From Octopus sinensis (Eukaryota): DNA of 23,417 bases. The position numbers were made by a program, and so were the translations under genes. The stretch is taken from the NCBI RefSeq assembly GCF_006345805.1, contig NW_021836616.1, positions 1-23,417 on the forward strand. Direction: 5' to 3'. Shown piece by piece: positions 333 through 22,647 of this stretch (the first letter of the stretch is position 1; each line of letters starts with the position of its first letter). The notes beneath the pieces are model-generated. The model was given only the letters and a program-made list of their open reading frames with translations, searched no databases and was not told the origin of the DNA.

Positions 333-339
333 CATCATC

Positions 340-370
<31 letters not shown>

Positions 371-765
371 TCAGCATCATCATCATCATTATCATCGTCA
401 TCATCATCGTCATTATCATCGTCGTCGTCGTCGTCATCGTCATCATCATCAGCAGCAGCATCATCATCATCATCATCGTCGTCGTCATCATCATCATCAT
501 CAGCAGCATCATCATCATCATCATCATCATCATCGTCATCATCATCGTCATCGTCATTATCATCGTCGTCGTCGTCATCATCGTCATCATCATCATCGTC
601 ATCATCATCATCGTCATCGTCATCATCGTCATCATCATCATCGTCATCATTATCATCATCATCATCATCATCATCATTATCATCATCATCGTCGTCGTCA
701 TCATCGTCATCATCATCATCAACATCATCGTCATCATCATTGTCATCATCATTACCATCATTATT
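333..765 (+). repeat. (CAT/CGT)n trinucleotide microsatellite; source of the spurious poly-Asp and poly-Met ORFs
   Basis: About 430 bp of catcatcatcgtcatc with cag interruptions. Confidence 0.95.
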
Positions 766-880: not shown

Positions 881-1623
881 TTTTTAACCATTACTGTCTT
901 CAAAAAAGTTTTTTTTCGTTTCATGTTCGTCTCTGTCGCGTTTGCATTCTTTCCTTCTACCAAGCGATCTAATGCCTACGGCTTAGTTCTCCTTGGGGCT
1001 GGCCGATTCAGAGCAGATCTCAGAATTAAACGGCCGAAATTTGCAATGATTAATCGATTTCTGACTGAAGAATGAAGGCTTTGAATGACCCGTCTGTTTT
1101 TATGTTCGTCCCTTCGTGTATTTCACGTTATTTTTATTTATATATGTAAAGTTTTATTATATATATATATATAAAGGGAGAGTTTACGAAAAAAACAAAA
1201 GGCGAAGATAGGTGGTGTACAAAACAAACAGATGAATTAGTATAACGCGCTCAAGAATAGAAAAAGTATTTTACGTTTCGAGCCTACGCCCTTCTACAGA
1301 AAGGTACACAGAAAAATCAAGGAGAGAAACAAGGTGAGAGAAAATGTGTATAGTGGCTAACGATCTATCATGGCGACTAGTGCCGGACAGAAGGATCAAA
1401 CATTTATATACATATATACATTTACAGGATTTATATATATAGGATTTATATATATGCATATGTAAATTTGTGTGTGTGTAGGTGTACGTGTATGAGTGTG
1501 TGTGCCTGTGTCACGAAGGTAACATATGTGCTAATAACTAAACATTCGATACATTATGCTCTTTGCAAACAGTTGTCAACAGGTGTAAGACAGTAGCTCT
1601 TAACTTTTGCTGTTGCTATTGTA

Positions 1624-1644
1624 ATTGTTGTTATTGTTATCCAT

Positions 1645-1679
<35 letters not shown>

Positions 1680-1689
1680 ATTATTATTA

Positions 1690-1781
<92 letters not shown>

Positions 1782-1817
1782 TATTATTATTATTATCGTT
1801 ATTATTAATATCATTAC

Positions 1818-1865
<48 letters not shown>

Positions 1866-1968
1866 ACTTATTACTATTATTACTATTATTACTATTATTA
1901 TTATTATCATTATTATTATTATACTACTCATTATTATTATTATTATTATATTATTAATTTTTATTATT
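1624..1968 (+). repeat. (TAT/AAT)n microsatellite
   Basis: Continuous tattattat with tac/cat interruptions. Confidence 0.95.
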
Positions 1969-2444
1969 GAGTGAGCGAGCAGAGCATGCCATCAAAGTGA
2001 CACAGGGGTAAAATATACGAAGCCCAGTATACCCATCATGACTACCCGTCTGATAAGGGTACACCAGGCACATGCATCACAACCATATGTGCGCGACATG
2101 GTGATCTCATATCAAGATAAACAGCACATGACCTTGCAGGTGGAGCCCAGTTAGAATTTTCTTCAGATCGAGTAGCCCATCCTGCTCAAAAGGTCCCGAA
2201 TAAGGGTTGTTTAAGGACGTTGAACGAAACACCCATGTTTCAGAGGTGAATTATTCAAACCCCAAGAATCCTTCTCAACACATGGCTAAATGCTCCCCAC
2301 TACTTCTGCTCGTGATCAGAGATGCACATATCGTCAGCCACTAAGGGACATGCTCAACTGGTTAAGGTCAAACAACTGACAAGCAAATCTGGTGGTATTG
2401 AGCAGAATATTTGCTGTAGCCCATCTTTTATACCAAGACAAAAC
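1969..2444 (-). mobile_element. Interspersed repeat (probable non-autonomous retroelement) embedded in (TAT)n on both sides
   Basis: 476-bp complex-sequence island with sharp borders in an ATT microsatellite. The minus strand ends ...ctcactc followed by (AAT)n, like a tail. It resembles from memory a common octopus repeat (not verified). Confidence 0.6.
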
Positions 2445-2833
2445 ATTATTATTACTATTATTATCATTATTATTATTATCATTATTATTATTTATTATTA
2501 TTATTACTATTATTACTATTATTATCATTATATATTATCATTATTAATTATTATTATTTTATTATTATATTACTATTATTACTATTTTATTATTATTATT
2601 ATTAATTATTATCATCATCATTATTATTATTATTATTACTATATTTTATTATTATCATCATCATCATTATTATTATTATTATCATTAACATTATTATTAT
2701 TATCATTATATTATTATTATTATTATTATTATTACTATTATTACTATTATTATATTATTTTATTATTATTATTAATTATTATTATTATATTATCATTATA
2801 TTATTATTATTATTACTATTACTATATTATTAC

Positions 2834-2865
<32 letters not shown>

Positions 2866-3011
2866 TATTATTATTATTATCATTACTATTATATTATTTA
2901 TTATTATTATTATTATTAATATTATTATTATTACTATTATTACTATTATTATTATTATTCTTATTATTATTATCATTACTATTATTATTATTTTATTATT
3001 ATTATTATTAT

Positions 3012-3042
<31 letters not shown>

Positions 3043-3191
3043 ATTATTATTATTATTATATTATTAATATTATTATTATTACTATTATTTTTATTAGTAT
3101 TATATATTATTATTATTATTATATATTATCATCATTACTATTATTATTATTTTATTATTAGTATTATTATATTATTATTATTATTATATAT

Positions 3192-3222
<31 letters not shown>

Positions 3223-3350
3223 ATTACTATTATTACTATTATTTTTATTACTATTATTATATTATTATTATTATTTTATTATTATTATATTATTATTATT
3301 ACTATTATTGTTGTTGTTGTTGTTGTTGCTGTTGTTGTCGTTGTTGGTGT
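2445..3350 (+). repeat. (TAT)n microsatellite ending in (GTT)n
   Basis: About 860 bp of tattattat, then gttgttgtt at 3310-3350. Confidence 0.95.
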
Positions 3351-3590
3351 TTTAGGTTGTAAGAGTTGTCAATGGCGGGAAATCGTCATTGATTCATGTA
3401 TTGGACCCCGCAAGAACGCAGGAACACCGTTGAAAGCTCGTAAATCATAAAATAAGAACTGTGTGGTTGTGGTGGGGGTGGGTGGGAGTATCTAGCAGAT
3501 GAAGTAGTAGTAGCTGGAGTAGTAGTAGTAGGAGTAGGAGTAACAGCAGCGGTTTTTGAATTATATATACACTCGTAACAATGGATGCAG

Positions 3591-5400: not shown

Positions 5401-8400
5401 CTGTCATCGTTCTATTCGTGTCATCATCATTGCTATATTTATAATCGATTTCGTTTGTAACTGTCATCGTTATCATCGTGTCATCATTCTATTCGTTGTC
5501 ATCATCATTGCTATATTTATAATCGATTTCGTGGTAACTGTCATCGTTATCATCGCTGTCATCGTTCTATTCGTTGTCATCATCATTGCTATATTTATAA
5601 TCGATTTCGTTGTAACTGTCATCGTTATCATCGCTGTCATCATTCTATTCGTTGTCATCATCATTGCTATATTTATAATCGATTTCGTTGTTACTGTCAT
5701 CGTTATCATCGCTGTCATCATTCTATTCGTTGTCATAATCATTGCTATATTTATAATCGATTTCGTTGTAATTGTCATCGTTATCATCGCTGTCATCATT
5801 CTATTCGTTGTCATCATCATTGCTATATTATAATCGATTTCGTTGTTACTGTCATCGTTATCATCGCTGTCATCATTCTATTCGTTTCATCATCATTGCT
5901 ATATTTATAATCGATTTCGTTGTAACTGTCATCGTTATCATCGCGTCATCGTTCTATTCGTTGTCATCATCATTGCTATATTTATAATCGATTTCGTTGT
6001 AACGTCATCGTTATCATCGCTGTCATCATTCTATTCGTTGTCATCATCATGCTATATTTATAATCGATTTCGTTGTAACTGTCATCGTTATCATCGCTGT
6101 CATCGTTCTATTCGTTGTCATCATCATTGCTATATTTATAATCGATTTCGTTGTAACTGTCATCGTTATCATCGCTGTCATCATTCTATTCGTTGTCATC
6201 ATCATTGCTATATTATAATCGATTTCGTGTAACTGTCATCGTTATCATCGCTGTCATCGTTCTATTCGTTGTCATCATCATTGCTATATTTATAATCGAT
6301 TTCGTTGTAACTGTCATCGTTATCATCGCTGTCATCATTCTATTCGTTGTCATCATCATTGCTATATTTATAATCGATTTCGTTGTAACTGTCATCGTTA
6401 TCATCGCTGTCATCGTTCTATTCGTTGTCATCATCATTGCTATATTTATAATCGATTTCGTTGTAACTGTCATCGTTATCATCGCTGTCATCATTCTATT
6501 CGTTGTCATCATCATTGCTATATTTATAATCGATTTCGTTGTAACTGTCATCGTTATCATCGCTGTCATCGTTCTATTCGTTGTCATCATCATTGCTATA
6601 TTTATAATCGATTTCGTTGTAACTGTCATCGTTATCATCGCTGTCATCATTCTATTCGTTGTCATCATCATTGCTATATTTATAATCGATTTCGTTGTAA
6701 CTGTCATCGTTATCATCGCTGTCATCATTCTATTCGTTTTCATCATCATTGCTATATTATAATCGATTTCGTTGTAACTGTCATCGTTATCATCGCTGTC
6801 ATCATTCTATTCGTTGTCATCATCATTGCTATATTTATAATCGATTTCGTTGTAACTGTCATCGTTATCATCGCTGTCATCATTCTATTCGTTGTCATCA
6901 TCATTGCTATTTATAATCGATTTCGTTGTAACTGTCATCGTTATCATCGCTGTCATCATTCTATCGTTGTCATCATCATTGCTATATTTATAATCGATTT
7001 CGTTGTAACTGTCATCGTATCATCGCTGTCATCATTCTATTCGTTGTCATCATCATTGCTATATTTATAATCGATTTCGTTGTAACTGTCATCGTTATCA
7101 TCGCTGTCATCATTCTATTCGTTGTCATCATCATTGCTATATTATAATCGATTTCGTTGTAACTGTCATCGTTATCATCGCTGTCATCGTTCTATTCGTT
7201 GTCATCATCATTGCTATATTTATAATCGATTTCGTTGTAACTGTCATCGTTATCATCGCTGTCATCATTCTATTCGTTGTCATCATCATTGCTATATTTA
7301 TAATCGATTTCGTTGTAACTGTCATCGTTATCATCGCTGTCATCGTTCTATTCGTTGTCATCATCATTGCTATATTTATAATCGATTTCGTTGTAACTGT
7401 CATTCGTTATCATCGCTGTCATCATTCTATTCGTTGTCATCATCATTGCTATATTATAATCGATTTCGTTGTAACTGTCATCGTTATCATCGCTGTCATC
7501 ATTCTATTCGTTGTCATCATCATTGCTATATTTATAATCGATTTCGTTGTAACTGTCATCGTTATCATCGCTGTCATCATTCTATTCGTTGTCATCATCA
7601 TTGATATTTATAATCGATTTCGTTGTAACTGTCATCGTTATCATCGCTGTCATCGTTCTATTCGTTGTCATCATCATTGCTATATTTATAATCGATTTCG
7701 TTGTAACTGTCATCGTTATCATCGCTGTCATCGTTCTATTCGTTGTCATCATCATTGCTAATATTATAATCGATTTCGTTGTAACTGTCATCGTATCATC
7801 GCTGTCATCATTCTATTCGTTGTCATCATCATTGCTATATTTATAATCGATTTCGTTGTAACTGTCATCGTTATCATCGCTGTCATCATTCTATTCGTTG
7901 TCATCATCATTGCTATATTTATAATCGATTTCGTTGTAACTGTCATCGTTATCATCGCTGTCATCATTCTATTCGTTGTCATCATCATTGCTATATTTAT
8001 AATCGATTTCGTTGTAACTGTCATCGTTATCATCGCTGTCATCATTCTATTCGTTGTCATCATCATGCTATATTATAATCGATTTCTTTGTTGTTGTAAC
8101 TGTCATCGTTATCATCGCTGTCATCATTCTATTCGTTGTCATCATCATTGCTATATTTATAATCGATTTCGTTGTAACTGTCATCGTATCATCGCTGTCA
8201 TCGTCTATTCGTTGTCATCATCATTGCTATATTTATAATCGATTTCGTTGTAACTGTCATCGTTATCATCGCTGTCATCGTTCTATTCGTTGTCATCATC
8301 ATTGCTATATTTATAATCGATTTCGTTGTAACTGTCATCGTTATCATCGCTGTCATCATTCTATTCGTTGTCATCATCATTGCTATATTTATAATCGATT

Positions 8401-11400
8401 TCGTTGTAACTGTCATCGTTATCATCGCTGTCATCATTCTATTCGTTGTCATCATCATTGCTATATTTATAATCGATTTCGTTGTAACTGTCATCGTTAT
8501 CATCGCTGTCATCATTCTATTCGTTGTCATCATCATTGCTATATTTATAATCGATTTCGTTGTTACTGTCATCGTTATCATCGCTGGTCATCATTCTATT
8601 CGTTGTCATCATCATTGCTATATTTATAATCGATTTCGTTGTTACTGTCATCGTTATCATCGCTGTCATCATTCTATTCGTTGTCATCATCATTGCTATA
8701 TTATAATCGATTTCGTTGTAACTGTCATCGTTATCATCGCTGTCATCATTCTATTCGTTGTCATCATCATTGCTATATTTATAATCGATTTCGTTGTACT
8801 GTCATCGTTATCATCGCTGTCATCATTCTATTCGTTGTCATCATCATTGCTATATTTATAATCGATTTCGTTGTAACTGTCATCGTTATCATCGCTGTCA
8901 TCGTTCTATTCGTTGTCATCATATTGCTATATTTATAATCGATTTTCGTTGGTACTGTCATCGTTATCATCGCTGTCATCGTTCTATTCGTTGTCATCAT
9001 CATTGCTATATTTATAATCGATTCGTCGTTGTAACTGTCATCGTTATCATCGCTGTCATCGTTCTATTCGTGTCATCATCATTGCTATATTTATAATCGA
9101 TTTCGTTGTAACTGTCATCGTTATCATCGCTGTCATCATTCTATTCGTTGTCATCATCATTGCTATATTATAATCGATTTCGTTGTACTGTCATCGTTAT
9201 CATCGCTGTCATCATTCTATTCGTTGTCATCATCATTGCTATATTTATAATCGATTTCGTTGTAACTGTCATCGTTATCATCGCTGTCATCATTCTATTC
9301 GTTGTCATCATCATTGCTATATTTATAATCGATTTCGTTGTAACTGTCATCGTTATCACCGCTGTCATCGTTCTATTCGTTGTCATCATCATTGCTATAT
9401 TTATAATCGATTTCGTTGTTACTGTCATCGTTATCATCGCTGTCATCATTCTATTCGTTGTCATCATCATTGCTATATTTATAATCGATTTCGTTGTAAC
9501 TGTCATCGTTATCACCGCTGTCATCATTCTATTCGTTGTCATCATCATTGCTATATTTATAATCGATTTCGTTGTAACTGTCATCGTTATCACCGCTGTC
9601 ATTCTATTCGTTGTCATCATCATTGCTATATTTATAATCGATTTCGTTGTAACTGTCATCGTTATCATCGCTGTCATCATTCTATTCGTTGTCATCATCA
9701 TTGCTATATTTATAATCGATTTCGTTGTAACTGTCATCGTTATCATCGCTGTCATCATTCTATTCGTTGTCATCATCATTGCTATATTATAATCGATTTC
9801 GTTGTAACTGTCATCGTTATCATCGCTGTCATCGTTCTATTCGTTGTCATCATCATTGCTATATTTAATCGATTTCGTTGTAACTGTCGTCGTTATCATC
9901 GCTGTCATCGTTCTATTCGTTGTCATCATCATTGCTATTTATAATCGATTTCGTTGTTACTGTCATCGTTATCATCGCTGTCATCATTCTATTCGTTGTC
10001 ATCATCATTGCTATATTTATAATCGATTTCGTTGTAACTGTCATCGTTATCATCGCTGTCATCGTTCTATTCGTTGTCATCATCATTGCTATATTTATAA
10101 TCGATTTCGTTGTAACTGTCATCGTTATCATCGCTGTCATCATTCTATTCGTTGTCATCATCATTGCTATATTTATAATCGATTTCGTTGTTACTGTCAT
10201 CGTTATCATCGCTGTCATCATTCTATTCGTTGTCATCATCATTGCTATATTTATAATAGATTTCGTTGTTATGTCATCGTTATCATCGCTGTCATCATTC
10301 TATTCGTTGTCATTATCATTGCTATATTTATAATCGATTTCGTTGTTACTGTCATCGTTATCATCGCTGTCATCATTCTATTCGTTGTTCATTATCATTG
10401 CTATATTATAATCGATTTCGTTGTTACTGTCATCGTTATCATCGCTGTCATCATTCTATTCGTTGTCATCATCATTGCTATATTTATAATCGATTTCGTT
10501 GTTACTGTCATCGTTATCATCGCTGTCATCAATATTCGTTGTCATTATCATTGCTATATTTATAATCGATTTCGTTGTTACTGTCATCGTTATCATCGCT
10601 GTCATCATTCTATTCGTTGTCATCATCATTGCTATATTTATAATCGATTTCGTTGTTACTGTCATCGTTATCATCGCTGTCATCATTCTATTCGTTGTCA
10701 TCATCATTGCTATATTTATAATCGATTTCGTTGTTACTGTCATCGTTATCATCGCTGTCATCATTCTATTCGTTGTCATCATCATTGCTATATTTATAAT
10801 CGATTTCGTTGTTACTGTCATCGTTATCATCGCTGTCATCATTCTATTCGTTGTCATTATCATTGCTATATTTATAATCGATTTCGTTGTACTGTCATCG
10901 TTATCATCGCTGTCATCATTCTATTCGTTGTCATTATCATTGCTATATTTATATCGATTTCGTTGTTACTGTCATCGTTATCATCGCTGTCATCATTCTA
11001 TTCGTTGTCATCATCATTGCTATATTTATAATCGATTTCGTTGTTACTGTCATCGTTATCATCGCTGTCATCATTCTATTCGTTGTCATTATCATTGCTA
11101 TATTTATAATCGATTTCGTTGTTACTGTCATCGTTATCATCGCTGTCATCATTCTATTCGTTGTCATTATCATTGCTATATTTATAATCGATTTCGTTGT
11201 AACTGTCATCGTTATCATCGCTGTCATCATTCTATTCGTTGTCATCATCATTGCTATATTTATAATCGATTTCGTTGTAACTGTCATCGTTATCATCGCT
11301 GTCATCATTCTATTCGTTGTCATCATCATTGCTATATTTATAATCGATTTCGTTGTTACTGTCATCGTTATCATCGCTGTCATCATTCTATTCGTTGTCA

Positions 11401-14400
11401 TCATCATTGCTATATTTATAATCGATTTCGTTGTTGTAACTGTCATCGTTATCATCGCTGTCATCATTCTATTCGTTGTCATCATCATTGCTATATTTAT
11501 AATCGATTTCGTTGTAACTGTCATCGTTATCATCGCTGTCATCATTCTATTCGTTGTCATCATCATTGCTATATTTATAATCGATTTCGTTGTAACTGTC
11601 ATCGTTATCATCGCTGTCATCATTCTATTCGTTGTCATCATCATTGCTATATTTATAATCGATTTCGTTGTTACTGTCATCGTTATCATCGCTGTCATCA
11701 TTCTATTCGTTGTCATCATCATTGCTATATTTATAATCGATTTCGTTGTAACTGTCATCGTTATCATCGCTGTCATCATTCTATTCGTTGTCATCATCAT
11801 GCTATATTTATAATCGATTTCGTTGTAACTGTCATCGTTATCATCGCTGTCATCATTCTATTCGTTGTCATCATCATTGCTATATTTATAATCGATTTCG
11901 TTGTAACTGTCATCGTTATCATCGCTGTCATCGTTCTATTCGTTGTCATCATCATTGCTATATTTATAATCGATTTCGTTGTTACTGTCATCGTTATCAT
12001 CGCTGTCATCGTTCTATTCGTTGTCATCATCATTGCTATATTTATAATCGATTTCGTTGTAACTGTCATCGTTATCATCGCTGTCATCGTTCTATTCGTT
12101 GTCATCATCATTGCTATATTTATAATCGATTCGTTGTAACTGTCATCGTTATCATCGCTGTCATCATTCTATTCGTTGTCATCATCATTGCTATATTTAT
12201 AATCGATTTCGTTGTTACTGTCATCGTTATCATCGCTGTCATCATTTATTCGTTGTCATCATCATTGCTATATTTATAATCGATTTCGTTGTTAACTGTC
12301 ATCGTTATCATCGCTGTCATCATTCTATTCGTTGTCATCATCATTGCTATATTATAATCGATTTCGTTGTAACTGTCATCGTTATCACCGCTGTCATCGT
12401 TCTATTCGTTGTCATCATCATTGCTATATTATAATCGATTTCGTTGTTACTGTCATCGTTATCATCGCTGTCATCATTCTATTCGTTGTCATCATCATTG
12501 CTATATTTATAATCGATTTCGTTGTAACTGTCATCGTTATCACCGCTGTCATCATTCTATTCGTTGTCATCATCATTGCTATATTTATAATCGATTTCGT
12601 TGTAACTGTCATCGTTATCACCGCTGTCATCGTTCTATTCGTTGTCATCATCATTGCTATTTTTATAATCGATTTCGTTGTAACTGTCATCGTTATCATC
12701 GCTGTCATCATTCTATTCGTTGTCATCATCATTGCTATATTTATAATCGATTTCGTTGTAACTGTCATCGTTATCATCGCTGTCATCATTCTATTCGTTG
12801 TCATCATCATTGCTATATTTATAATCGATTTCGTTGTAACTGTCATCGTTATCATCGCTGTCATCGTTCTATTCGTTGTCATCATCATTGCTATATTTAT
12901 AATCGATTTCGTTGTAACTGTCGTCGTTATCATCGCTGTCATCGTTCTATTCGTTGTCATCATCATTGCTATATTTATAATCGATTTCGTTGTAACTGTC
13001 ATCGTTATCATCGCTGTCATCATTCTATTCGTTGTCATCATCATTTTCTATTTGTGTTTCATCATCTTGGCTATTTTTTTTATCATCGATTTCGTTGTTG
13101 TAACTGTCATCGTTATCATCGCTGTCATCGTTCTATTCGTTGTCATCATCATTGCTATATTTATAATCGATTTCGTGTTCGTTGTAACTGTCATCGTTAT
13201 CATCGCTGTCATCATTCTATTCGTTGTCATCATCATTGCTATATTTATAATCGATTTCGTTGTTACTGTCATCGTTATCATCGCTGTCATCATTCTATTC
13301 GTTGTCATCATCATTGCTATATTTATAATCGATTTCGTTGTTACTGTCATCGTTATCATCGCTGTCATCATTCTATTCGTTGTCATTATCATTGCTATAT
13401 TTATAATCGATTTCGTTGTTACTGTCATCGTTATCATCGCTGTCATCATTCTATTCGTGTCATTATCATTGCTATATTTATAATCGATTTCGTTGTTACT
13501 GTCATCGTTATCATCGCTGTCATCATTCTATTCGTTGTCATCATCATTGCTATATTTATAATCGATTTCGTTGTTACTGTCATCGTTATCATCGCTGTCA
13601 TCATTCTATTCGTTGTCATTATCATTGCTATATTTATAATCGATTTCGTTTTACTGTCATCGTTATCATCATCGCTGTCATCATTCTATTCGTTGTCATC
13701 ATCATTGCTATATTTATAATCGATTTCGTTGTTACTGTCATCGTTATCATCGCTGTCATCATTCTATTCGTTGTCATTATCATTGCTATATTTATAATCG
13801 ATTTCGTTGTAACTGTCATCGTTATCATCGCTGTCATCATTCTATTCGTTGTCACCATCATTGCTATATTTATAATCGATTTCGTTGTAACTGTCATCGT
13901 TATCATCGCTGTCATCGTTCTATTCGTTGTCATCATCATTGCTATATTTATAATCGATTTCGTTGTACTGTCATCGTTATCATCATCGCTGTCATCGTTC
14001 TATTCGTTGTCATCATCATTGCTATATTTATAATCGATTTCGTTGTTACTGTCATCGTTATCATCGCTGTCATCATTCTATTCGTTGTCATCATCATTGC
14101 TTATATTTATAATCGATTTCGTTGTTACTGTCATCGTTATCATCGCTGTCATCATTCTATTCGTTGTCATTATCATTGCTATATTTATAATCGATTTCGT
14201 TGTTACTGTCATCGTTATCATCGCTGTCATCATTCATTCGTTGTCATCATCATTGCTATATTTTTAATCGATTTCGTTGTAACTGTCATCGTTATCATCG
14301 CTGTCATCATTCTATTCGTTGTCATCATCATTGCTATATTTATAATCGATTTCGTGTTTTTCATGTCATCGTTATCATCGCTGTCATCATTCTATTCGTT

Positions 14401-15889
14401 GTCATTATCATTGCTATATTTATAATCGATTTCGTTGTTACTGTCTCCGTTATCATCGCTGTCATCATCATCTATTCGTTGTCATTATCATTGCTATATT
14501 TATAATCGATTTCGTTGTTACTGTCATCGTTATCATCGCTGTCATCATTCTATTCGTTGTCATCATCATTGCTATATTTATAATCGATTTCGTTGTAACT
14601 GTCATCGTTATCATCGCTGTCATCATTCTATTCGTTGTCATCATCATTGCTATATTATAATCGATTTCGTTGTTACTGTCATCGTTATCATCGCTGTCAT
14701 CATTCTATTCGTTGTCATCATCATTGCTATATTTATAATCGATTTCGTTGTAACTGTCATCGTTATCATCGCTGTCATCATTCTATTCGTTGTCATCATC
14801 ATTGCTATATTTATAATCGATTTCGTTGTTACTGTCATCGTTATCATCGCTGTCATCATTCTATTCGTTGTCATTATCATTGCTATATTTATAATCGATT
14901 TCGTTGTTACTTGTCATCGTTATCATCGCTGTCATCATTCTATTCGTTGTCATTATCATTGCTATATTTATAATCGATTTCGTTGTTACTGTCATCGTTA
15001 TCATCGCTGTCATCATTCTATTCGTTGTCATCATCATTGCTATATTTATAATCGATTTCGTTGTAACTGTCATCGTTATCATCGCTGTCATCGTTCTATT
15101 CGTTGTCATCATCATTGCTATATTTATAATCGATTTCGTTGTTACTGTCATCGTTATCATCGCTGTCATCATTCTATTCGTTGTCATTATCATTGCTATA
15201 TTTATAATCGATTTCGTTGTTACTGTCATCGTTATCATCGCTGTCATCATTCTATTCGTTGTCATTATCATTGCTATATTTATAATCGATTTCGTTGTTA
15301 CTGTCATCGTTATCATCGCTGTCATCATTCTATTCGTTGTCATCATCATTGCTATATTTATAATCGATTTCGTTGTTACTGTCATCGTTATCACATCGCT
15401 GTCATCATTCTATTCGTTGTCATATCATTGCTATATTTATAATCGATTTCGTTGTTACTGTCATCGTTATCATCGCTGTCATCATTCTATTCGTTGTCAT
15501 CATCATTGCTATATTTATAATCGATTTCGTTGTTACTGTCATCGTTATCATCGCTGTCATCATTCTATTCGTTGTCATTATCATTGCTATATTTATAATC
15601 GATTTCGTTGTTACTGTCATCGTTATCATCGCTGTCATCATTCTATTCGTTGTCATTATCATTGCTATATTTATAATCGATTTCGTTGTTACTACTGTCA
15701 TCGTTTCATCGCTGTCATCATTCTATTCGTTGTCATTATCATTGCTATATTTATAATCGATTTCGTTGTAACTGTCATCGTTATCATCGCTGTCATCATT
15801 CTATTCGTTGTCATCATCATTGCTATATTTATAATCGATTTCGTTGTTACTGTCATCGTCATCATCGCTGTCATCATTCTATTCGTTGT
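5401..15889. repeat. Tandem array (satellite/minisatellite) of a 78-bp monomer, ~135 copies. Consensus gctatatttataatcgatttcgttgtaactgtcatcgttatcatcgctgtcatcattctattcgttgtcatcatcatt
   Basis: Monomer counted as 78 nt, matching the 26-aa period in the ORF track. Span 10,489 bp / 78 = ~134.5. One ClaI site (ATCGAT) in nearly every unit. Confidence 0.98.
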
Positions 15890-16440: not shown

Positions 16441-16492
16441 AAAGATAGATAGATAGGTAGACAGACAGACAGAAAGATAGATAGATAGATAT

Positions 16493-16524
<32 letters not shown>

Positions 16525-16548
16525 ACAGACAGAAAGACAGGCAAATAA

Positions 16549-16633
<85 letters not shown>

Positions 16634-16676
16634 GGGGATAGATAGATAGACAGAAAGACAAACAAACAAATAGATG

Positions 16677-16730
<54 letters not shown>

Positions 16731-16910
16731 GGGGATAGATAGAAAGACAGAAAGACAAACAGACAAATAGATGGATTAACAGACAGAAAGACAGACAAAT
16801 AGATAGATAGGTTGATAGATACATAGATAGACAGATAGAAAGACGAATAGATAGATAGATGAGAGAGGGTAAGAGAGAGAGAGGGAGGAGGGAGAGGGAG
16901 AAGGAGAGAT
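16441..16910 (+). repeat. (GATA/GACA)n tetranucleotide microsatellite followed by a GA-rich tract
   Basis: agatagatagat... with gacagacagaaa interruptions. Confidence 0.95.

Positions 16911-17328: not shown

Positions 17329-17416
<88 letters not shown>
17329..17416. repeat. (TA)n microsatellite
   Basis: tatatatata run. Confidence 0.95.
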
Positions 17417-17421
<5 letters not shown>

Positions 17422-17499
17422 TTTAATAATGGTGAAAAATATTTTTGAAGAAAAGAAAATGAAAATGAATGCTGTAAGAGATATTTATTTCCATTATAC

Positions 17500-17530
<31 letters not shown>

Positions 17531-17634
17531 TACATACATATACATGCATATATATATATATGTATATATGTATATATGTATCTATGTATATATATATACA
17601 TATATACATATATACATATATACATGTATACATG

Positions 17635-17675
<41 letters not shown>

Positions 17676-17764
17676 TACAATATATGTATATATGTATATG
17701 CATACAACACACATACATATATACATACATATATATATTATATACATACATAATATATATATAT

Positions 17765-17822
<58 letters not shown>

Positions 17823-19502: not shown

Positions 19503-20101
19503 GGCGGTGAGCTGGCAGAAACGTTAGCACGCCGGGCGAAATGCTTAGCGGTATTTCGTATGTCGTTACGTTGTGAGTTCAAATTCCGCCGAGGTCGACT
19601 TTGCCTTTCATCCTTTCGGGGTCGATAAATTTAGTACCAGTTAAGCACTGGGGTCGATGTAATCGACTTAATACCTATGTCTGTCCTTGTTTGTCCCCTC
19701 TGTGTTTAGCCCCTTGTGGGTAATAAAGAAATAGGTATTTCGTCTGTCGTTACGTTGTGAGTTCAAATTCCGCCGAGGTCGACTTTGCCTTTCATCCTTT
19801 CGGGGTTGATAAATTAAGTACCAGTTAAGCACTGGGGTCGATGTAATCGACTTAATACCTATGTCTGTCCTTGTTTGTCCCCTCTGTGTTTAGCCCCTTG
19901 TGGGCAATAAAGAAATAGGTATTTCGTCTGTCGTTACGTTGTGAGTTCAAATTCCGCCGAGGTCGACTTTGCCTTTCATCCCTTCGGTGTCGATAAATTT
20001 AGTACCAGTTAAGCACTGGGGTCGATGTAATCGACTTAATACCTATGTCTGTCCTTGTTTGTCCCCTCTGTGTTTAGCCCCTTGCGGGTAGTAAAGAAGT
20101 A
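19503..20101 (+). mobile_element. tRNA-derived SINE with a 184-bp body triplicated head-to-tail, flanked by an 18-bp TSD
   Basis: A-box-like TGGCAGAAACG (19513-19523) and B-box-like GAGTTCAAATTCC (19575-19587). Units start at 19550, 19734 and 19918. TSD ggtatctacccc(a/c)aaata at 19484-19501 and 20102-20119 (17/18 identical). Confidence 0.9.
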
Positions 20102-20449
20102 GGTATCTACCCCCAAATACTTCAGGGTATTACTTATAGCTTATTCCGTTTCGAGTTCCACATTCATTTAATGTCTTTTAACGTTTCTGAGCTTTTGTTA
20201 TGTAAACAATATACAATTCTCGCTGGTAAGAACAAAGCTTCTAAAATGGATGGAGAAATTTGAAGGTTTGCTTTATACCAATGGATGAGTGTCTATCATG
20301 TTCACAGGAGAGGTGAATGATATGGGTTCAAGTCCTACCTGCAGCATTTGATTCCTTCTATCTAAGAGTATTTTTAACCCAATTTTCTACACGCTATTAT
20401 TTATACTTACATCTACTTCGAGTTCCACCGTTAAAACCGATGTATAATA

Positions 20450-22052: not shown

Positions 22053-22189
22053 CAGAGCGTACTGGGCCAAATAAATACCGAAAGGTATTCTAATATCCAA
22101 AACCCTGAACCACCGATTTGCTATCTTCTGTTGAAGACAGCAATACAATCACAAACAGAAAGATAGTTATATAAATGGATCTTATAATA

Positions 22190-22329
22190 ATAATAAAAAC
22201 GTATATAATTTGTAGAATAACGACACGCGTTTCGTGGCTATATTTAAGAAATGATTATAGTAGTAGAGAAATCACTTTAATATAAATATAGTCACTCATC
22301 AGGTTAAAAATTATATACGTTTTTATTAT
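22190..22329 (-). ncRNA. Type I hammerhead ribozyme motif; predicted cleavage after GUC, between 22222 and 22221
   Basis: Minus strand: stem I (22-bp distal helix + UAAC) - CUGAUGA (22302-22296) - stem II GUGACUAUAUUUA/UAAAUAUAGCCAC (12 of 13 paired) - GAAA (22233-22230) - C GCGU GUC - GUUA - bulge - distal stem I strand. All conserved core nucleotides are present. Confidence 0.85.
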
Positions 22330-22564
22330 CATATTTTTGCAATTTACTTAATCATTGACATGTTATTGTTATTTTAATTTTAATATTTCTATTATATGTA
22401 ATTTTCTAGATCGTGTAACTTAATTGTTCATTTTGAATTGATAAAAGGTGTTTTTTTTCTAATTTTTTATATATATATTACGTTGTGTGAAATTTGATTT
22501 AGTATTTCTAACTTGATTTTTTTTTCCTTGTAAGTTTGGATTTTATTCCCTCAAATAATAATAA

Positions 22565-22566
22565 TC

Positions 22567-22647
<81 letters not shown>

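What the first reader, a model, noticed from the sequence alone, without database searches (positions are those of the whole stretch)
22190..22329. Complete hammerhead ribozyme on the minus strand with very long stems I and II
Seen: the minus strand reads AUAAUAAAAACGUAUAUAAUUU-U-UAAC-CUGAUGA-GUGACUAUAUUUA-UAUU-AAAGUGAUU-(loop)-AAUCAUUU-CU-UAAAUAUAGCCAC-GAAA-C-GCGU-GUC/GUUA-UUCUAC-AAAUUAUAUACGUUUUUAUUAU. The core is canonical: C3U4G5A6U7G8A9, G10.1-C11.1, G12A13A14, A15.1-U16.1, C17. Stem I has 4 proximal bp, an asymmetric bulge, then a perfect 22-bp helix (22190-22211 with 22308-22329). Stem II has 12/13 bp plus an ~8-bp extension. Established: type I hammerheads in animals occur in Penelope-like element (PLE) terminal repeats, retrozymes and satellite transcripts. 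Inference: this is a recent or conserved self-cleaving RNA module, possibly of an undescribed cephalopod retrozyme or PLE-derived family. The stems are long compared with minimal PLE hammerheads.
Basis: partly seen in the sequence, partly recalled or inferred. Interest (0 to 1): 0.9.

Follow-up and report, generated by a model that had tools for sequence, protein, structure and literature searches.

The report
Hammerhead ribozyme in octopus-like retroelement
The window holds a sequence-complete type I hammerhead self-cleaving motif that belongs to a young, multi-copy, non-coding repeat family with Penelope-like insertion habits; its striking 22-bp "stem I" comes from a local inverted duplication and is not a ribozyme feature.

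Summary
A simple hammerhead descriptor finds this one site in the window and none in 1000 shuffles. No Rfam hammerhead model detects it.

It is not a one-off. At least 427 copies of the 5' half of the ribozyme, and about 3,500 copies of the element's 3' part, lie in this 2.72-Gb genome. The element is AT-rich, non-coding and at least 1.6 kb long, with the ribozyme 267 nt from its 3' end.

Copies sit in (TA)n microsatellites, are 5'-truncated, and often form head-to-head inverted pairs. These are the insertion hallmarks of Penelope-like elements (PLEs).

- **Stem I:** the window holds two inverted partial copies whose 26-nt overlap makes the "perfect 22-bp stem I". Family copies have only a 4-bp inner helix I.
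- **Stem II:** the long helix II (13+9 bp) is a real family trait, with one compensatory U-A to C-G change.
- **Helix III:** 2 bp with a palindromic loop, the PLE/newt style that can act as a dimer.

In an unbiased sample, 19 of 20 truncated copies start 2 to 34 nt after the cleavage site and none in the 42 nt before it. This suggests, but does not prove, cleavage in vivo. It is not a tandem retrozyme.

The parts
22190..22329 (-). Whole feature as reported: hammerhead motif plus the two 22-nt outer arms
   Evidence: Sequence read; fold; descriptor hit
22296..22302 (-). Core C3-A9 (CUGAUGA)
   Evidence: CUGANGA is intact in 90 of the 100 listed family copies
22283..22295 (-). Helix II proximal 5' strand, GUGACUAUAUUUA (G10.1 = 22295)
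   Evidence: Family variants are GUGGC (58), GUGAC (21) and GCGAC (12) among 100 copies
22234..22246 (-). Helix II proximal 3' strand, UAAAUAUAGCCAC (C11.1 = 22234). 12 of 13 pairs, with an A.C mismatch at 10.4/11.4
   Evidence: Variants GCCAC and GCCGC listed
22249..22277 (-). Distal helix II extension: AAGUGAUU pairs with AAUCAUUU (8 bp here, 9 bp in the consensus), with a 13-nt loop at 22269-22257
22230..22233 (-). Core G12 A13 A14 A15.1 (GAAA)
22222..22230 (-). Helix III (A15.1-U16.1 and C15.2-G16.2, loop GCGU) and C17 at 22222. Predicted scissile bond is 22222|22221. ACGCGUGU is self-complementary with G.U pairs; the family consensus ACACGUGU is a perfect 8-nt palindrome
   Evidence: Dimer cofold gains about 10 kcal/mol
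22303..22306 (-). Helix I inner 5' strand, UAAC, pairing with GUUA at 22221-22218
22218..22221 (-). Helix I inner 3' strand, GUUA
22186..22311 (-). Fragment of the repeat family (consensus positions q43-168, 98% identity) that carries the hammerhead
   Evidence: BLAST of the 399-bp family consensus against the window
22305..22565 (+). Inverted partner: the 3' part of the same repeat family (q140-399, 95% identity) on the opposite strand.
   Evidence: The same head-to-head arrangement is seen in L010, L011, L015, L028, L061-L091
22567..22647 (.). (AT)n microsatellite abutting the 3' end (q399) of the plus-strand copy. This is the usual insertion context of the family

Best explanation
**Shown.**
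- The feature is a sequence-complete type I hammerhead motif on the sense strand of a young, dispersed, AT-rich, non-coding repeat family.
- The host genome is 2.72 Gb with 30 large scaffolds. Its size and the literature fit Octopus sinensis, but this was not verified.
- The family element is at least 1.6 kb long. The ribozyme's cleavage site lies 267 nt from the 3' end (q132/q133 of my 399-bp consensus).
- Copies end in or next to (TA)n, are 5'-truncated, and frequently occur as head-to-head inverted pairs.
- The window holds one such pair: q140-399 on the plus strand abutting q43-168 on the minus strand. Their 26-nt overlap creates the 'perfect 22-bp stem I'.

**Inferred.**
- The family is a non-autonomous element copied in trans by a Penelope-like RT/GIY-YIG enzyme, whose intact ORFs exist elsewhere in this genome.
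- Transcripts fold into a hammerhead with a 4-bp helix I, a 13+9-bp helix II and a 2-bp helix III. The palindromic ACACGUGU of helix III lets two ribozymes pair into an 8-bp helix III.
- The RNA self-cleaves after C17. The 3' product (q133-399) keeps the RT entry site and is reverse-transcribed at nicked (TA)n sites, often from both DNA strands.
- This would explain three things: most copies lack the ribozyme; truncated copies begin just after q133; and both arms of inverted pairs end there.

If transcribed, the window copy has an intact core. It could cleave at 22222|22221, but the products would stay held together by the accidental 25-bp helix.
For: **Motif and chance.**

**Family size.** Reversed-pattern controls gave 0 in every count.
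- 427 matches to the ribozyme 5' half.
- 211 matches to q84-120.
- 975 matches to q176-212.
- 3549 matches to q247-283.

**Family structure.**
- Consensus and (TA)n flanks.
- The element extends at least 1.2 kb upstream without an ORF.
- Window anatomy.
- Head-to-head pairs: 7 '-+' against 0 '+-' among 100 mapped places, and 13 of 30 loci.

**5' ends.** The sample was chosen only by the 3' region.
- 10 copies reach q1 or beyond.
- 1 copy starts at q92.
- 19 copies start at q135-166.
- None starts at q2-91 or q93-134.
- L067 starts at the G right after the cleavage site.
- Both arms of pairs L061, L064, L071, L075 and L086 end at about q135-158.

**Helix II covariation.**
- GUGGC/GCCAC is a perfect helix.
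- GCGAC pairs with GCCGC at C3:84057667, C5:50892809 and C1:160136077. This is a U-A to C-G change via the GCGAC/GCCAC intermediate seen in L020 and L021.

**Fold energies.** The hammerhead fold is within 3.8 kcal/mol of the MFE. The dimer gains about 10 kcal/mol.

**Relation to other hammerheads here.** The same genome carries a canonical 42-nt PLE-type hammerhead with a nearly identical helix III, ACAYGUGU.

**Candidate partners.** Intact GIY-YIG-containing open frames of 601-883 aa are present.

**Literature.**
- PLE hallmarks and (TA)n targets: PMC8557442.
- PLE hammerhead architecture and dimers: PMC4209133.
- A PLE enzyme nicks and extends both strands at AT-rich sites: PMC11167929.
Against: - No cleavage or expression data exist.
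- No Rfam hammerhead model detects any family copy, even at E<=10. The same tool scores a different hammerhead with a 66-nt loop insert at 31 bits.
- The segment q143-168 is TA/ATT-like. Microhomology with (TA)n targets could therefore cluster 5' ends there without any cleavage.
- A second cluster of 5' ends at q21-43 appears in the ribozyme-selected sample.
- Copy number keeps rising 3' of q176 (975 to 3549), so truncation is not confined to the cleavage site.
- Core conservation among copies (90%) is no better than neutral decay of a young repeat would give.
- The covariation amounts to a single event.
- No autonomous partner was linked. There is no ORF within 1.2 kb and no GIY-YIG hit within 10 kb of 100 copies.
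- For the one PLE studied in vitro, hammerhead cleavage was dispensable and no cleaved RNAs were seen (PMC11167929).
- Ribozyme pairs in cis are rare, so dimer-mode cleavage would need two transcripts.
Confidence: 0.65

Rival explanations
1. Relic motif. The hammerhead was inherited from a PLE terminal repeat but no longer cleaves. The clustering of 5' ends after q133 would then reflect microhomology-mediated joining, or RT stalling in the TA/ATT-like segment q143-168, not RNA cleavage.
For: - q143-168 resembles the (TA)n/(ATT)n targets, and many junctions show TA microhomology.
- 5' ends also cluster at the internal (TA)n before q1 and at q21-43.
- PLE hammerheads have low activity in vitro and were dispensable for PAc (PMC4209133, PMC11167929).
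- The window subfamily carries an A.C mismatch in helix II.
- Rfam is silent.
Against: - Equally TA-rich stretches inside the ribozyme (q64-75, q108-115) and q1-35 hold no 5' ends in the unbiased sample.
- The left edge of the cluster is at q133-135, where the sequence GUUAUUCUAC is not TA-like.
- No ends fall at the base of the far more stable helix II, where a stall would be expected.
- There is a compensatory U-A to C-G change in helix II.
Confidence: 0.25
2. One reading: a metazoan non-LTR retrozyme. Tandem ribozyme-bearing repeats would be cut at both ends into a unit RNA that is circularised and retrotransposed.
For: - Type I hammerhead, low GC, and a unit of a few hundred bp around the ribozyme.
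- One tandem pair 379 bp apart in L007.
- Retrozymes are argued to be non-autonomous PLE derivatives (bioRxiv 10.64898/2026.07.22.740005; PMC7229834).
Against: - Copies are dispersed singles flanked by (TA)n or unique DNA.
- Only 1 of about 60 loci has two ribozymes in tandem.
- The element is at least 1.6 kb long with a single ribozyme.
- Most copies lack the ribozyme altogether (427 against 3549).
- No circularly permuted copies ending at q132 were seen.
Confidence: 0.07
3. The motif lies in the terminal repeat (pLTR) or 3' UTR of an autonomous PLE, and the copies seen are just its 5'-truncated remains.
For: - 5' truncation points are spread over more than 1.2 kb upstream, and the true 5' end was not reached.
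- Intact PLE-size open frames with GIY-YIG are present in the genome.
- Hammerheads sit in the pLTRs of PLEs (PMC4209133, PMC8557442).
Against: - The 1.2 kb upstream is AT-rich and has no open frame longer than 86 aa.
- No PLE-like ORF is seen in any of 60 family loci.
- The nearest GIY-YIG hit to any of 100 mapped copies is 27 kb away.
Confidence: 0.12
4. Chance hammerhead-like pattern inside an AT-rich palindrome, or a foldback/MITE DNA element.
For: - The locus is a long imperfect inverted repeat in AT-rich DNA.
- Rfam finds nothing.
Against: - 0 descriptor hits in 1000 shuffles.
- The same motif recurs in at least 427 copies that lack the outer inverted arms.
- Family copies have no terminal inverted repeats and show 5'-truncation polarity.
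Confidence: 0.02

Closest known systems
PLE-associated minimal type I hammerheads (Cervera & de la Pena 2014, PMC4209133)
   Same: - Type I topology and canonical core.
- Short helix I (4 bp) with an ill-defined loop 1.
- Enlarged helix II and a conserved G10.1-C11.1 pair.
- A very short helix III with a palindromic sequence that permits dimer formation.
- The host element inserts in a PLE-like manner.
   Different: - Helix II is 13+9 bp instead of 7-8 bp.
- There is no unpaired nucleotide between A9 and G10.1.
- No RT/GIY-YIG ORF or pLTR arrangement was found around it.
- Rfam and descriptor-type searches tuned to short helices would miss it.
Canonical 42-nt hammerhead family of the same genome (GUACCUGAAGAGACCCAGAAYGGGUCGAAACAUGUGUCGUAC)
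   Same: - Same genome.
- Same core and the same 4-bp helix I style.
- Nearly identical helix III and loop 3 (ACAUGUGU against ACACGUGU; L046 has ACACGUGU).
- Also resides in short dispersed repeats, with one 431-bp tandem pair.
   Different: - Its helix II is 4 bp with a 4-5-nt loop, and it is detected by RF00163 (up to 48 bits).
- There is no sequence similarity outside the core and helix III.
Metazoan non-LTR retrozymes (Cervera & de la Pena 2020, PMC7229834; Li et al. 2026 preprint)
   Same: - Non-coding, low-GC, non-autonomous elements carrying type I hammerheads.
- Thought to depend on PLEs.
- Invertebrate examples also have a 2-bp helix III with a tetraloop.
   Different: - Retrozymes are tandem arrays of 170-400-bp units giving circular RNAs.
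- This family is dispersed, at least 1.6 kb long, and has one ribozyme per copy.
- Most of its copies lack the ribozyme.
Newt satellite 2 / Schistosoma Sm-alpha hammerheads acting as dimers (own knowledge, and as summarised in PMC4209133 and PMC7229834)
   Same: A weak helix III with a palindromic loop, so two ribozymes can form one extended helix III.
   Different: Those sit in tandem satellite repeats, so partners are in cis. Here partners would mostly have to be separate transcripts.
HDV-like ribozymes at the 5' ends of R2, RTE and L1Tc non-LTR retrotransposons (own knowledge)
   Same: A self-cleaving RNA defines the 5' end of a retrotransposon template.
   Different: - An HDV-like ribozyme cuts at its own 5' edge and stays in the element.
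- This hammerhead cuts at its 3' side. The reverse-transcribed product therefore loses the ribozyme and is dead on arrival.
PLE 'inverted 5'-truncated copy' insertions (PMC8557442) and L1 twin-priming inversions (own knowledge)
   Same: The window's two inverted partial copies with a short overlap at the junction match this architecture. L078, L088 and L066 are clean examples.
   Different: The mechanism for this family is untested.

Membership tests
Hammerhead ribozyme, type I | Conserved core C3 U4 G5 A6 N7 G8 A9, G12 A13 A14, and cleavage triplet N-U-H (here GUC) | tested here: met
   Read directly and found by the descriptor. 90 of 100 copies keep CUGANGA.
Hammerhead ribozyme, type I | Three helices around the core, with the open ends in helix I; G10.1-C11.1 and A15.1-U16.1 pairs | tested here: met
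   Pair table. The hammerhead fold scores -15.2 kcal/mol against an MFE of -19.0.
Hammerhead ribozyme, type I | Match to the curated covariance model (Rfam RF00163 or any other hammerhead model) | tested here: not met
   No hit at gathering score. No hit at E<=10 on 421 nt around the window copy or on the perfect-helix-II copy L081. Positive control L054 scored 31.3 bits.
Hammerhead ribozyme, type I | Site-specific self-cleavage giving 2',3'-cyclic phosphate and 5'-OH ends | not testable with these tools
   Only indirect evidence: 5' ends of truncated genomic copies begin at q133-135 and later, and none in the 42 nt before.
Hammerhead ribozyme, type I | Loop-loop tertiary contacts between helices I and II, needed for fast cleavage at low Mg2+ | not tested
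   The helix I internal loop (AUUUU/UUCUAC) faces a 13-bp helix II rather than a loop. The outer helix I is variable among copies.
PLE-associated min-hammerhead | Short helix III with palindromic 15.2-16.2/loop 3, allowing a dimeric active form | tested here: met
   ACACGUGU is a perfect 8-nt palindrome in the consensus. ACGCGUGU in the window pairs with G.U. Cofold gains about 10 kcal/mol.
PLE-associated min-hammerhead | Helix I of 4-5 bp and an enlarged helix II (7-8 bp) | tested here: met
   Helix I inner is 4 bp. Helix II is larger still, at 13+9 bp.
PLE-associated min-hammerhead | Unpaired nucleotide between A9 and G10.1 | tested here: not met
   CUGAUGA is followed directly by G10.1 in all subfamilies.
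PLE-associated min-hammerhead | Located in the pLTR of an element encoding RT plus GIY-YIG endonuclease | tested here: inconclusive
   No ORF in the 1.2 kb upstream and none in the family loci. No GIY-YIG hit within 10 kb of 100 copies.
Penelope-like insertion architecture | Microsatellite, especially (TA)n, insertion bias | tested here: met
   (TA)n or (ATT)n lies at the ends of most copies. The window copy ends at (AT)n 22567-22647.
Penelope-like insertion architecture | Inverted 5'-truncated copy adjacent to the 5' end; partial tandems | tested here: met
   13 of 30 loci hold head-to-head pairs. 7 '-+' against 0 '+-' close pairs. Partial tandems are seen in L007 and L017.
Metazoan non-LTR retrozyme | Tandem repeats of 170-400 bp, each with a type I hammerhead, so that double cleavage releases a unit RNA | tested here: not met
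   One tandem ribozyme pair in about 60 loci. The element is at least 1.6 kb long with one ribozyme.
Metazoan non-LTR retrozyme | Expression as linear and circular RNAs | not testable with these tools
   No transcriptome data available here.

The most novel reading that the evidence does not exclude
The genome itself may record hammerhead activity. Self-cleaved transcripts (5' end at q133) would be the main templates copied by a Penelope-like enzyme, from both strands of nicked (TA)n sites. That would produce thousands of ribozyme-less, head-to-head 'dead-on-arrival' copies. It would be the first in-genome evidence that a PLE-type hammerhead cleaves in vivo and shapes what gets retrotransposed. 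This question was left open by the in vitro PLE work, where cleavage was dispensable and no cleaved RNAs were detected (PMC11167929).
Probability: 0.4. Interest if true: 0.6.

Novelty: new member of a known kind. Interest (0 to 1): 0.4.

Why it matters
**What is already known.** Hammerheads in animal genomes, their link to Penelope-like elements, and dimer-type helix III are established. Cephalopod genomes are already reported to contain Rfam hammerhead_1 hits (235 in the giant squid, PMC6962438). The kind of object is therefore not new.

**What is worth keeping.**
- This family escapes every Rfam hammerhead model, so covariance-model censuses undercount such ribozymes.
- It shows an unusually long, covarying helix II.
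- The sharp onset of 5'-truncated copies at the predicted cleavage site offers a cheap, testable genomic read-out of whether PLE-type hammerheads act in vivo. That question is currently unresolved.

**A caution for motif hunters.** The most eye-catching feature, the perfect 22-bp stem I, came from how the element inserted and was not selected in the RNA.

Tried and rejected
- **Rfam.** Scans at gathering and at E<=10 on the window, and on a perfect-helix-II copy, gave no hammerhead hit. The only weak hits were snoRNA models matching the CUGAUGA box by chance, and I rejected them.
- **tRNA scan of the window.** None found.
- **Other collections.** Exact-pattern scans of metagenome and viral contigs for the ribozyme 26-mer gave 0 hits, so no cross-species comparison was possible.
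- **More copies.** I did not try another route and used pattern counts instead.
- Two patterns were too long or gapped.
- **Wasted search.** One pattern was mis-specified by one N.
- **Autonomous partner.** ORF listing of all 91 loci found only LINE-type and DNA-transposon-type fragments unrelated to the family. GIY-YIG hits do not co-localise with mapped copies.
- **Shared tail.** I looked for similarity between this family and the canonical hammerhead repeats outside the ribozyme. I found only chance neighbouring insertions.
- **Core conservation as evidence of selection.** Rejected as uninformative. Copies of a young repeat decay neutrally, and 90% intact cores is what about 2-5% divergence predicts.

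Full report
**1. The observation.**

- Helix I inner: UAAC (22306-22303), pairing with GUUA (22221-22218).
- Core: CUGAUGA (22302-22296) and GAAA (22233-22230).
- Helix II: 13 positions with 12 pairs and one A.C mismatch (22295-22283 with 22246-22234). After a small internal loop there is an 8-bp extension and a 13-nt loop.
- Helix III: only A-U and C-G, closing the loop GCGU.
- Cleavage site: C17 is 22222, so the predicted cut is 22222|22221.
- Outer arms: the two 22-nt arms (22329-22308 and 22211-22190) are perfect complements.

RNAfold gives -40.1 kcal/mol, z = -7.7. I wrote a simple hammerhead descriptor requiring helix I of at least 4 bp, helix II of at least 6 bp with at most one mismatch, helix III of at least 2 bp, and CUGANGA/GAAA/UH. 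It finds this one site in the window and none in 1000 dinucleotide shuffles.

**2. Rfam does not see it.**

No family reaches its gathering score in the window. No hammerhead model appears even at E<=10 on 421 nt. The same is true for a sister copy with a perfect helix II (L081). The tool is not blind to long inserts: another hammerhead in this genome with a 66-nt insert in loop II scores 31.3 bits (L054). Membership of 'hammerhead' therefore rests on direct inspection of the defining core and helices, not on the curated model.

**3. It is a repeat family.**

The window is a whole 23.4-kb contig of a 2.72-Gb assembly with 30 chromosome-size scaffolds. It is full of microsatellites and eukaryotic repeats. 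The size fits the published Octopus sinensis assembly (PMC12564688, citing Li et al. 2020). That identification is an inference.

A DNA search of the genome returned copies at 92-98% identity. Aligning 30 loci gave a 399-bp consensus, whose coordinates I call q1-399. C17 is q132.

Exact-pattern counts over the whole genome are below. Reversed-pattern controls gave 0 in every case.

| Region | Matches |
|---|---|
| Ribozyme 5' half | 427 |
| q84-120 (young-subfamily pattern) | 211 |
| q176-212 | 975 |
| q247-283 | 3549 |

Homology continues at least 1.2 kb upstream of q1, through an internal (TA)n, in many loci on different chromosomes and with different truncation points. That upstream part is AT-rich and has no open frame above 86 aa. 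The element is therefore a non-coding repeat of at least 1.6 kb, with the ribozyme near its 3' end. The ribozyme lies on the strand that the 5'-truncation polarity marks as the RNA sense strand.

**4. What the window really holds.**

BLAST of the consensus against the window gives two pieces.
- Plus strand, 22305-22565 = q140-399 at 95% identity. It ends at the (AT)n at 22567-22647.
- Minus strand, 22311-22186 = q43-168 at 98% identity.

These are two partial copies lying head to head.

In ordinary family copies the sequence upstream of UAAC is ...UUGUUCUAGUUUAUUUU. The only outer helix I is then UAGUUU/AAAUUA, which is 6 bp with one G.U pair. Subfamily substitutions break even that.

The long stem I is therefore an accident of insertion. 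The long stem II is a family trait.

**5. Insertion architecture.**

- Copies end at q399 or at the internal TA stretch (q297-318), next to (TA)n or (ATT)n.
- Thirteen of 30 loci chosen by the 3' region contain head-to-head pairs.
- Among 100 mapped places there are seven close '-+' pairs and no '+-' pair.
- L078, L088 and L066 are clean inversions of one part of the element relative to the rest.
- A partial tandem occurs in L007, with ribozymes 379 bp apart.

These are the features described for Penelope-like elements: pseudo-LTR tandems, an inverted 5'-truncated copy at the 5' end, and (TA)n preference (PMC8557442). A purified PLE enzyme nicks and extends both strands of AT-rich targets (PMC11167929).

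The genome has many GIY-YIG hits in open frames of 601-883 aa, including five of 781 aa. Candidate autonomous partners therefore exist. None lies within 10 kb of 100 mapped ribozyme copies, and no PLE-like ORF is in the family loci. I conclude the family is most likely non-autonomous.

**6. The ribozyme's style.**

- Helix I is 4 bp.
- Helix III is 2 bp plus a tetraloop. The 8-nt stretch ACACGUGU is a perfect palindrome, so two ribozymes can form an 8-bp helix III. Cofolding gains about 10 kcal/mol.
- This is the architecture reported for PLE hammerheads and for newt and schistosome repeats (PMC4209133, PMC7229834).
- It lacks the bulged base between A9 and G10.1.
- Its helix II is far longer (13+9 bp against 7-8 bp).

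The same genome carries an abundant canonical 42-nt hammerhead with an almost identical helix III, ACAUGUGU. That suggests common descent.

Helix II varies in a structured way. Among 100 copies the proximal 5' strand is GUGGC in 58, GUGAC in 21 and GCGAC in 12.
- GUGGC pairs perfectly with GCCAC.
- The window's GUGAC subfamily has an A.C mismatch.
- Pairing by coordinates shows GCGAC with GCCGC at three loci. This is a U-A to C-G double change whose C.A intermediate survives in L020 and L021.

That is one compensatory event, so it is modest evidence. A 3' variant GCAGC seems to go with a damaged 5' half (C1:71176156).

**7. Does it cleave in vivo?**

There is no direct evidence. There is a genomic footprint.

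Thirty copies were picked solely by a perfect match to q170-297, so they are unbiased for anything upstream. Their 5' ends fall as follows.

| 5' end | Copies |
|---|---|
| q1 or beyond | 10 |
| q2-91 | 0 |
| q92 | 1 |
| q93-134 | 0 |
| q135-166 | 19 |

- If ends were spread evenly over q93-166, all 19 falling downstream has probability about 1e-7.
- L067 begins at the G immediately after the cleavage site. L063 and L071 begin within two or three bases of it.
- In five inverted pairs both arms end at about q135-158. That is expected if two cDNAs each ran to the 5' end of a cleaved RNA.

Caveats.
- q143-168 is TA/ATT-like, and microhomology with the targets could favour joins there.
- The ribozyme-selected sample has another cluster at q21-43.
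- Copy number keeps rising further 3' (975 to 3549).

Against the microhomology-only view, equally TA-rich stretches inside the ribozyme hold no ends, and none falls at the base of the stable helix II. I put in vivo cleavage at roughly 0.5-0.6.

**8. Comparison and verdict.**

The element works like a PLE-type hammerhead in a non-autonomous PLE-dependent element.

It is not a retrozyme as defined. There are no tandem arrays, there is one ribozyme per copy, and most copies lack the ribozyme.

The kind is known. Cephalopod hammerhead_1 hits have been reported (PMC6962438). I found no paper describing this family or any octopus hammerhead repeat.

I rate it a new member of a known kind, of moderate interest. 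One lead is worth following: the 5'-end step at the cleavage site.

Noticed in passing
window 5401-15889: A 10.5-kb array of a 78-bp unit (about 134 copies, 93-97% matches, with 156- and 234-bp higher-order periods). It has strongly skewed composition (T- and C-rich on the plus strand) and long repeat-encoded open frames on both strands. It takes up almost half of this small unplaced contig.
   Followed up: no
window 19550-20106: Three tandem copies of a 184-bp unit (96% matches). Its start (GTGAGTTCAAATTCCGCCGAGGTCGAC...) looks like the T-arm half of a tRNA, as in tRNA-derived SINEs. ARAGORN calls no tRNA in the window.
   Followed up: partly
L031-L060 (e.g. G000:C13:29988995-29989039; C16:25146363 and 25146794): A separate, abundant canonical type I hammerhead of 42 nt (GTACCTGAAGAGACCCAGAAYGGGTCGAAACATGTGTCGTAC). 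Eight copies score above the Rfam cut-off. It sits at the very 5' edge of a ~180-bp dispersed repeat. One pair is tandem at 431 bp, which is retrozyme-like.
   Followed up: partly
L038, L047, L054 (G000:C5:69975879, C1:96435221, C7:2605576): Variants of the canonical hammerhead with a 60-66-nt insertion in loop II (103-109 nt overall). They are still recognised by RF00163 at 31-34 bits.
   Followed up: no
G000, e.g. C1:207477583, C3:65736423, C6:12733272, C6:12759897, C19:35627265: GIY-YIG endonuclease hits with identical scores inside uninterrupted 781-aa frames (others of 601-883 aa). This suggests a recently active Penelope-like family with intact ORFs. Whether it mobilises the hammerhead repeat is unknown.
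   Followed up: no
Family loci L010, L011, L024 and the window (consensus q41-43); L015, L022, L028 (q21-24): Recurrent 5' end points of ribozyme-bearing copies just upstream of helix I, usually abutting an inverted 3' fragment of the same element. This is a second junction hot spot that the cleavage model does not explain.
   Followed up: partly
L080 upstream region (positions 131-395 and 807-1071 of the 1260-nt extract): The non-coding 5' part of the long element contains an internal ~265-bp duplication at about 70% identity.
   Followed up: no
G000 copies with helix II 3' strand GCAGC (15 or more places, e.g. C1:71176116, C2:26929234, C5:19236173): A sub-lineage whose helix II 3' strand no longer pairs. 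In the one case where both halves are visible it also has a mutated core (CUGAUAA) and a lost G10.1. It may have spread from a ribozyme-dead source copy.
   Followed up: partly
window 333-761, 1671-1968, 2445-3309, 16443-16860, 17329-17822: Very long microsatellites: (CAT)143, (TAT)100, (ATT)292, (AGAT)104 and (AT)250. They make the contig mostly simple or tandem repeat, which probably explains why it is unplaced.
   Followed up: no
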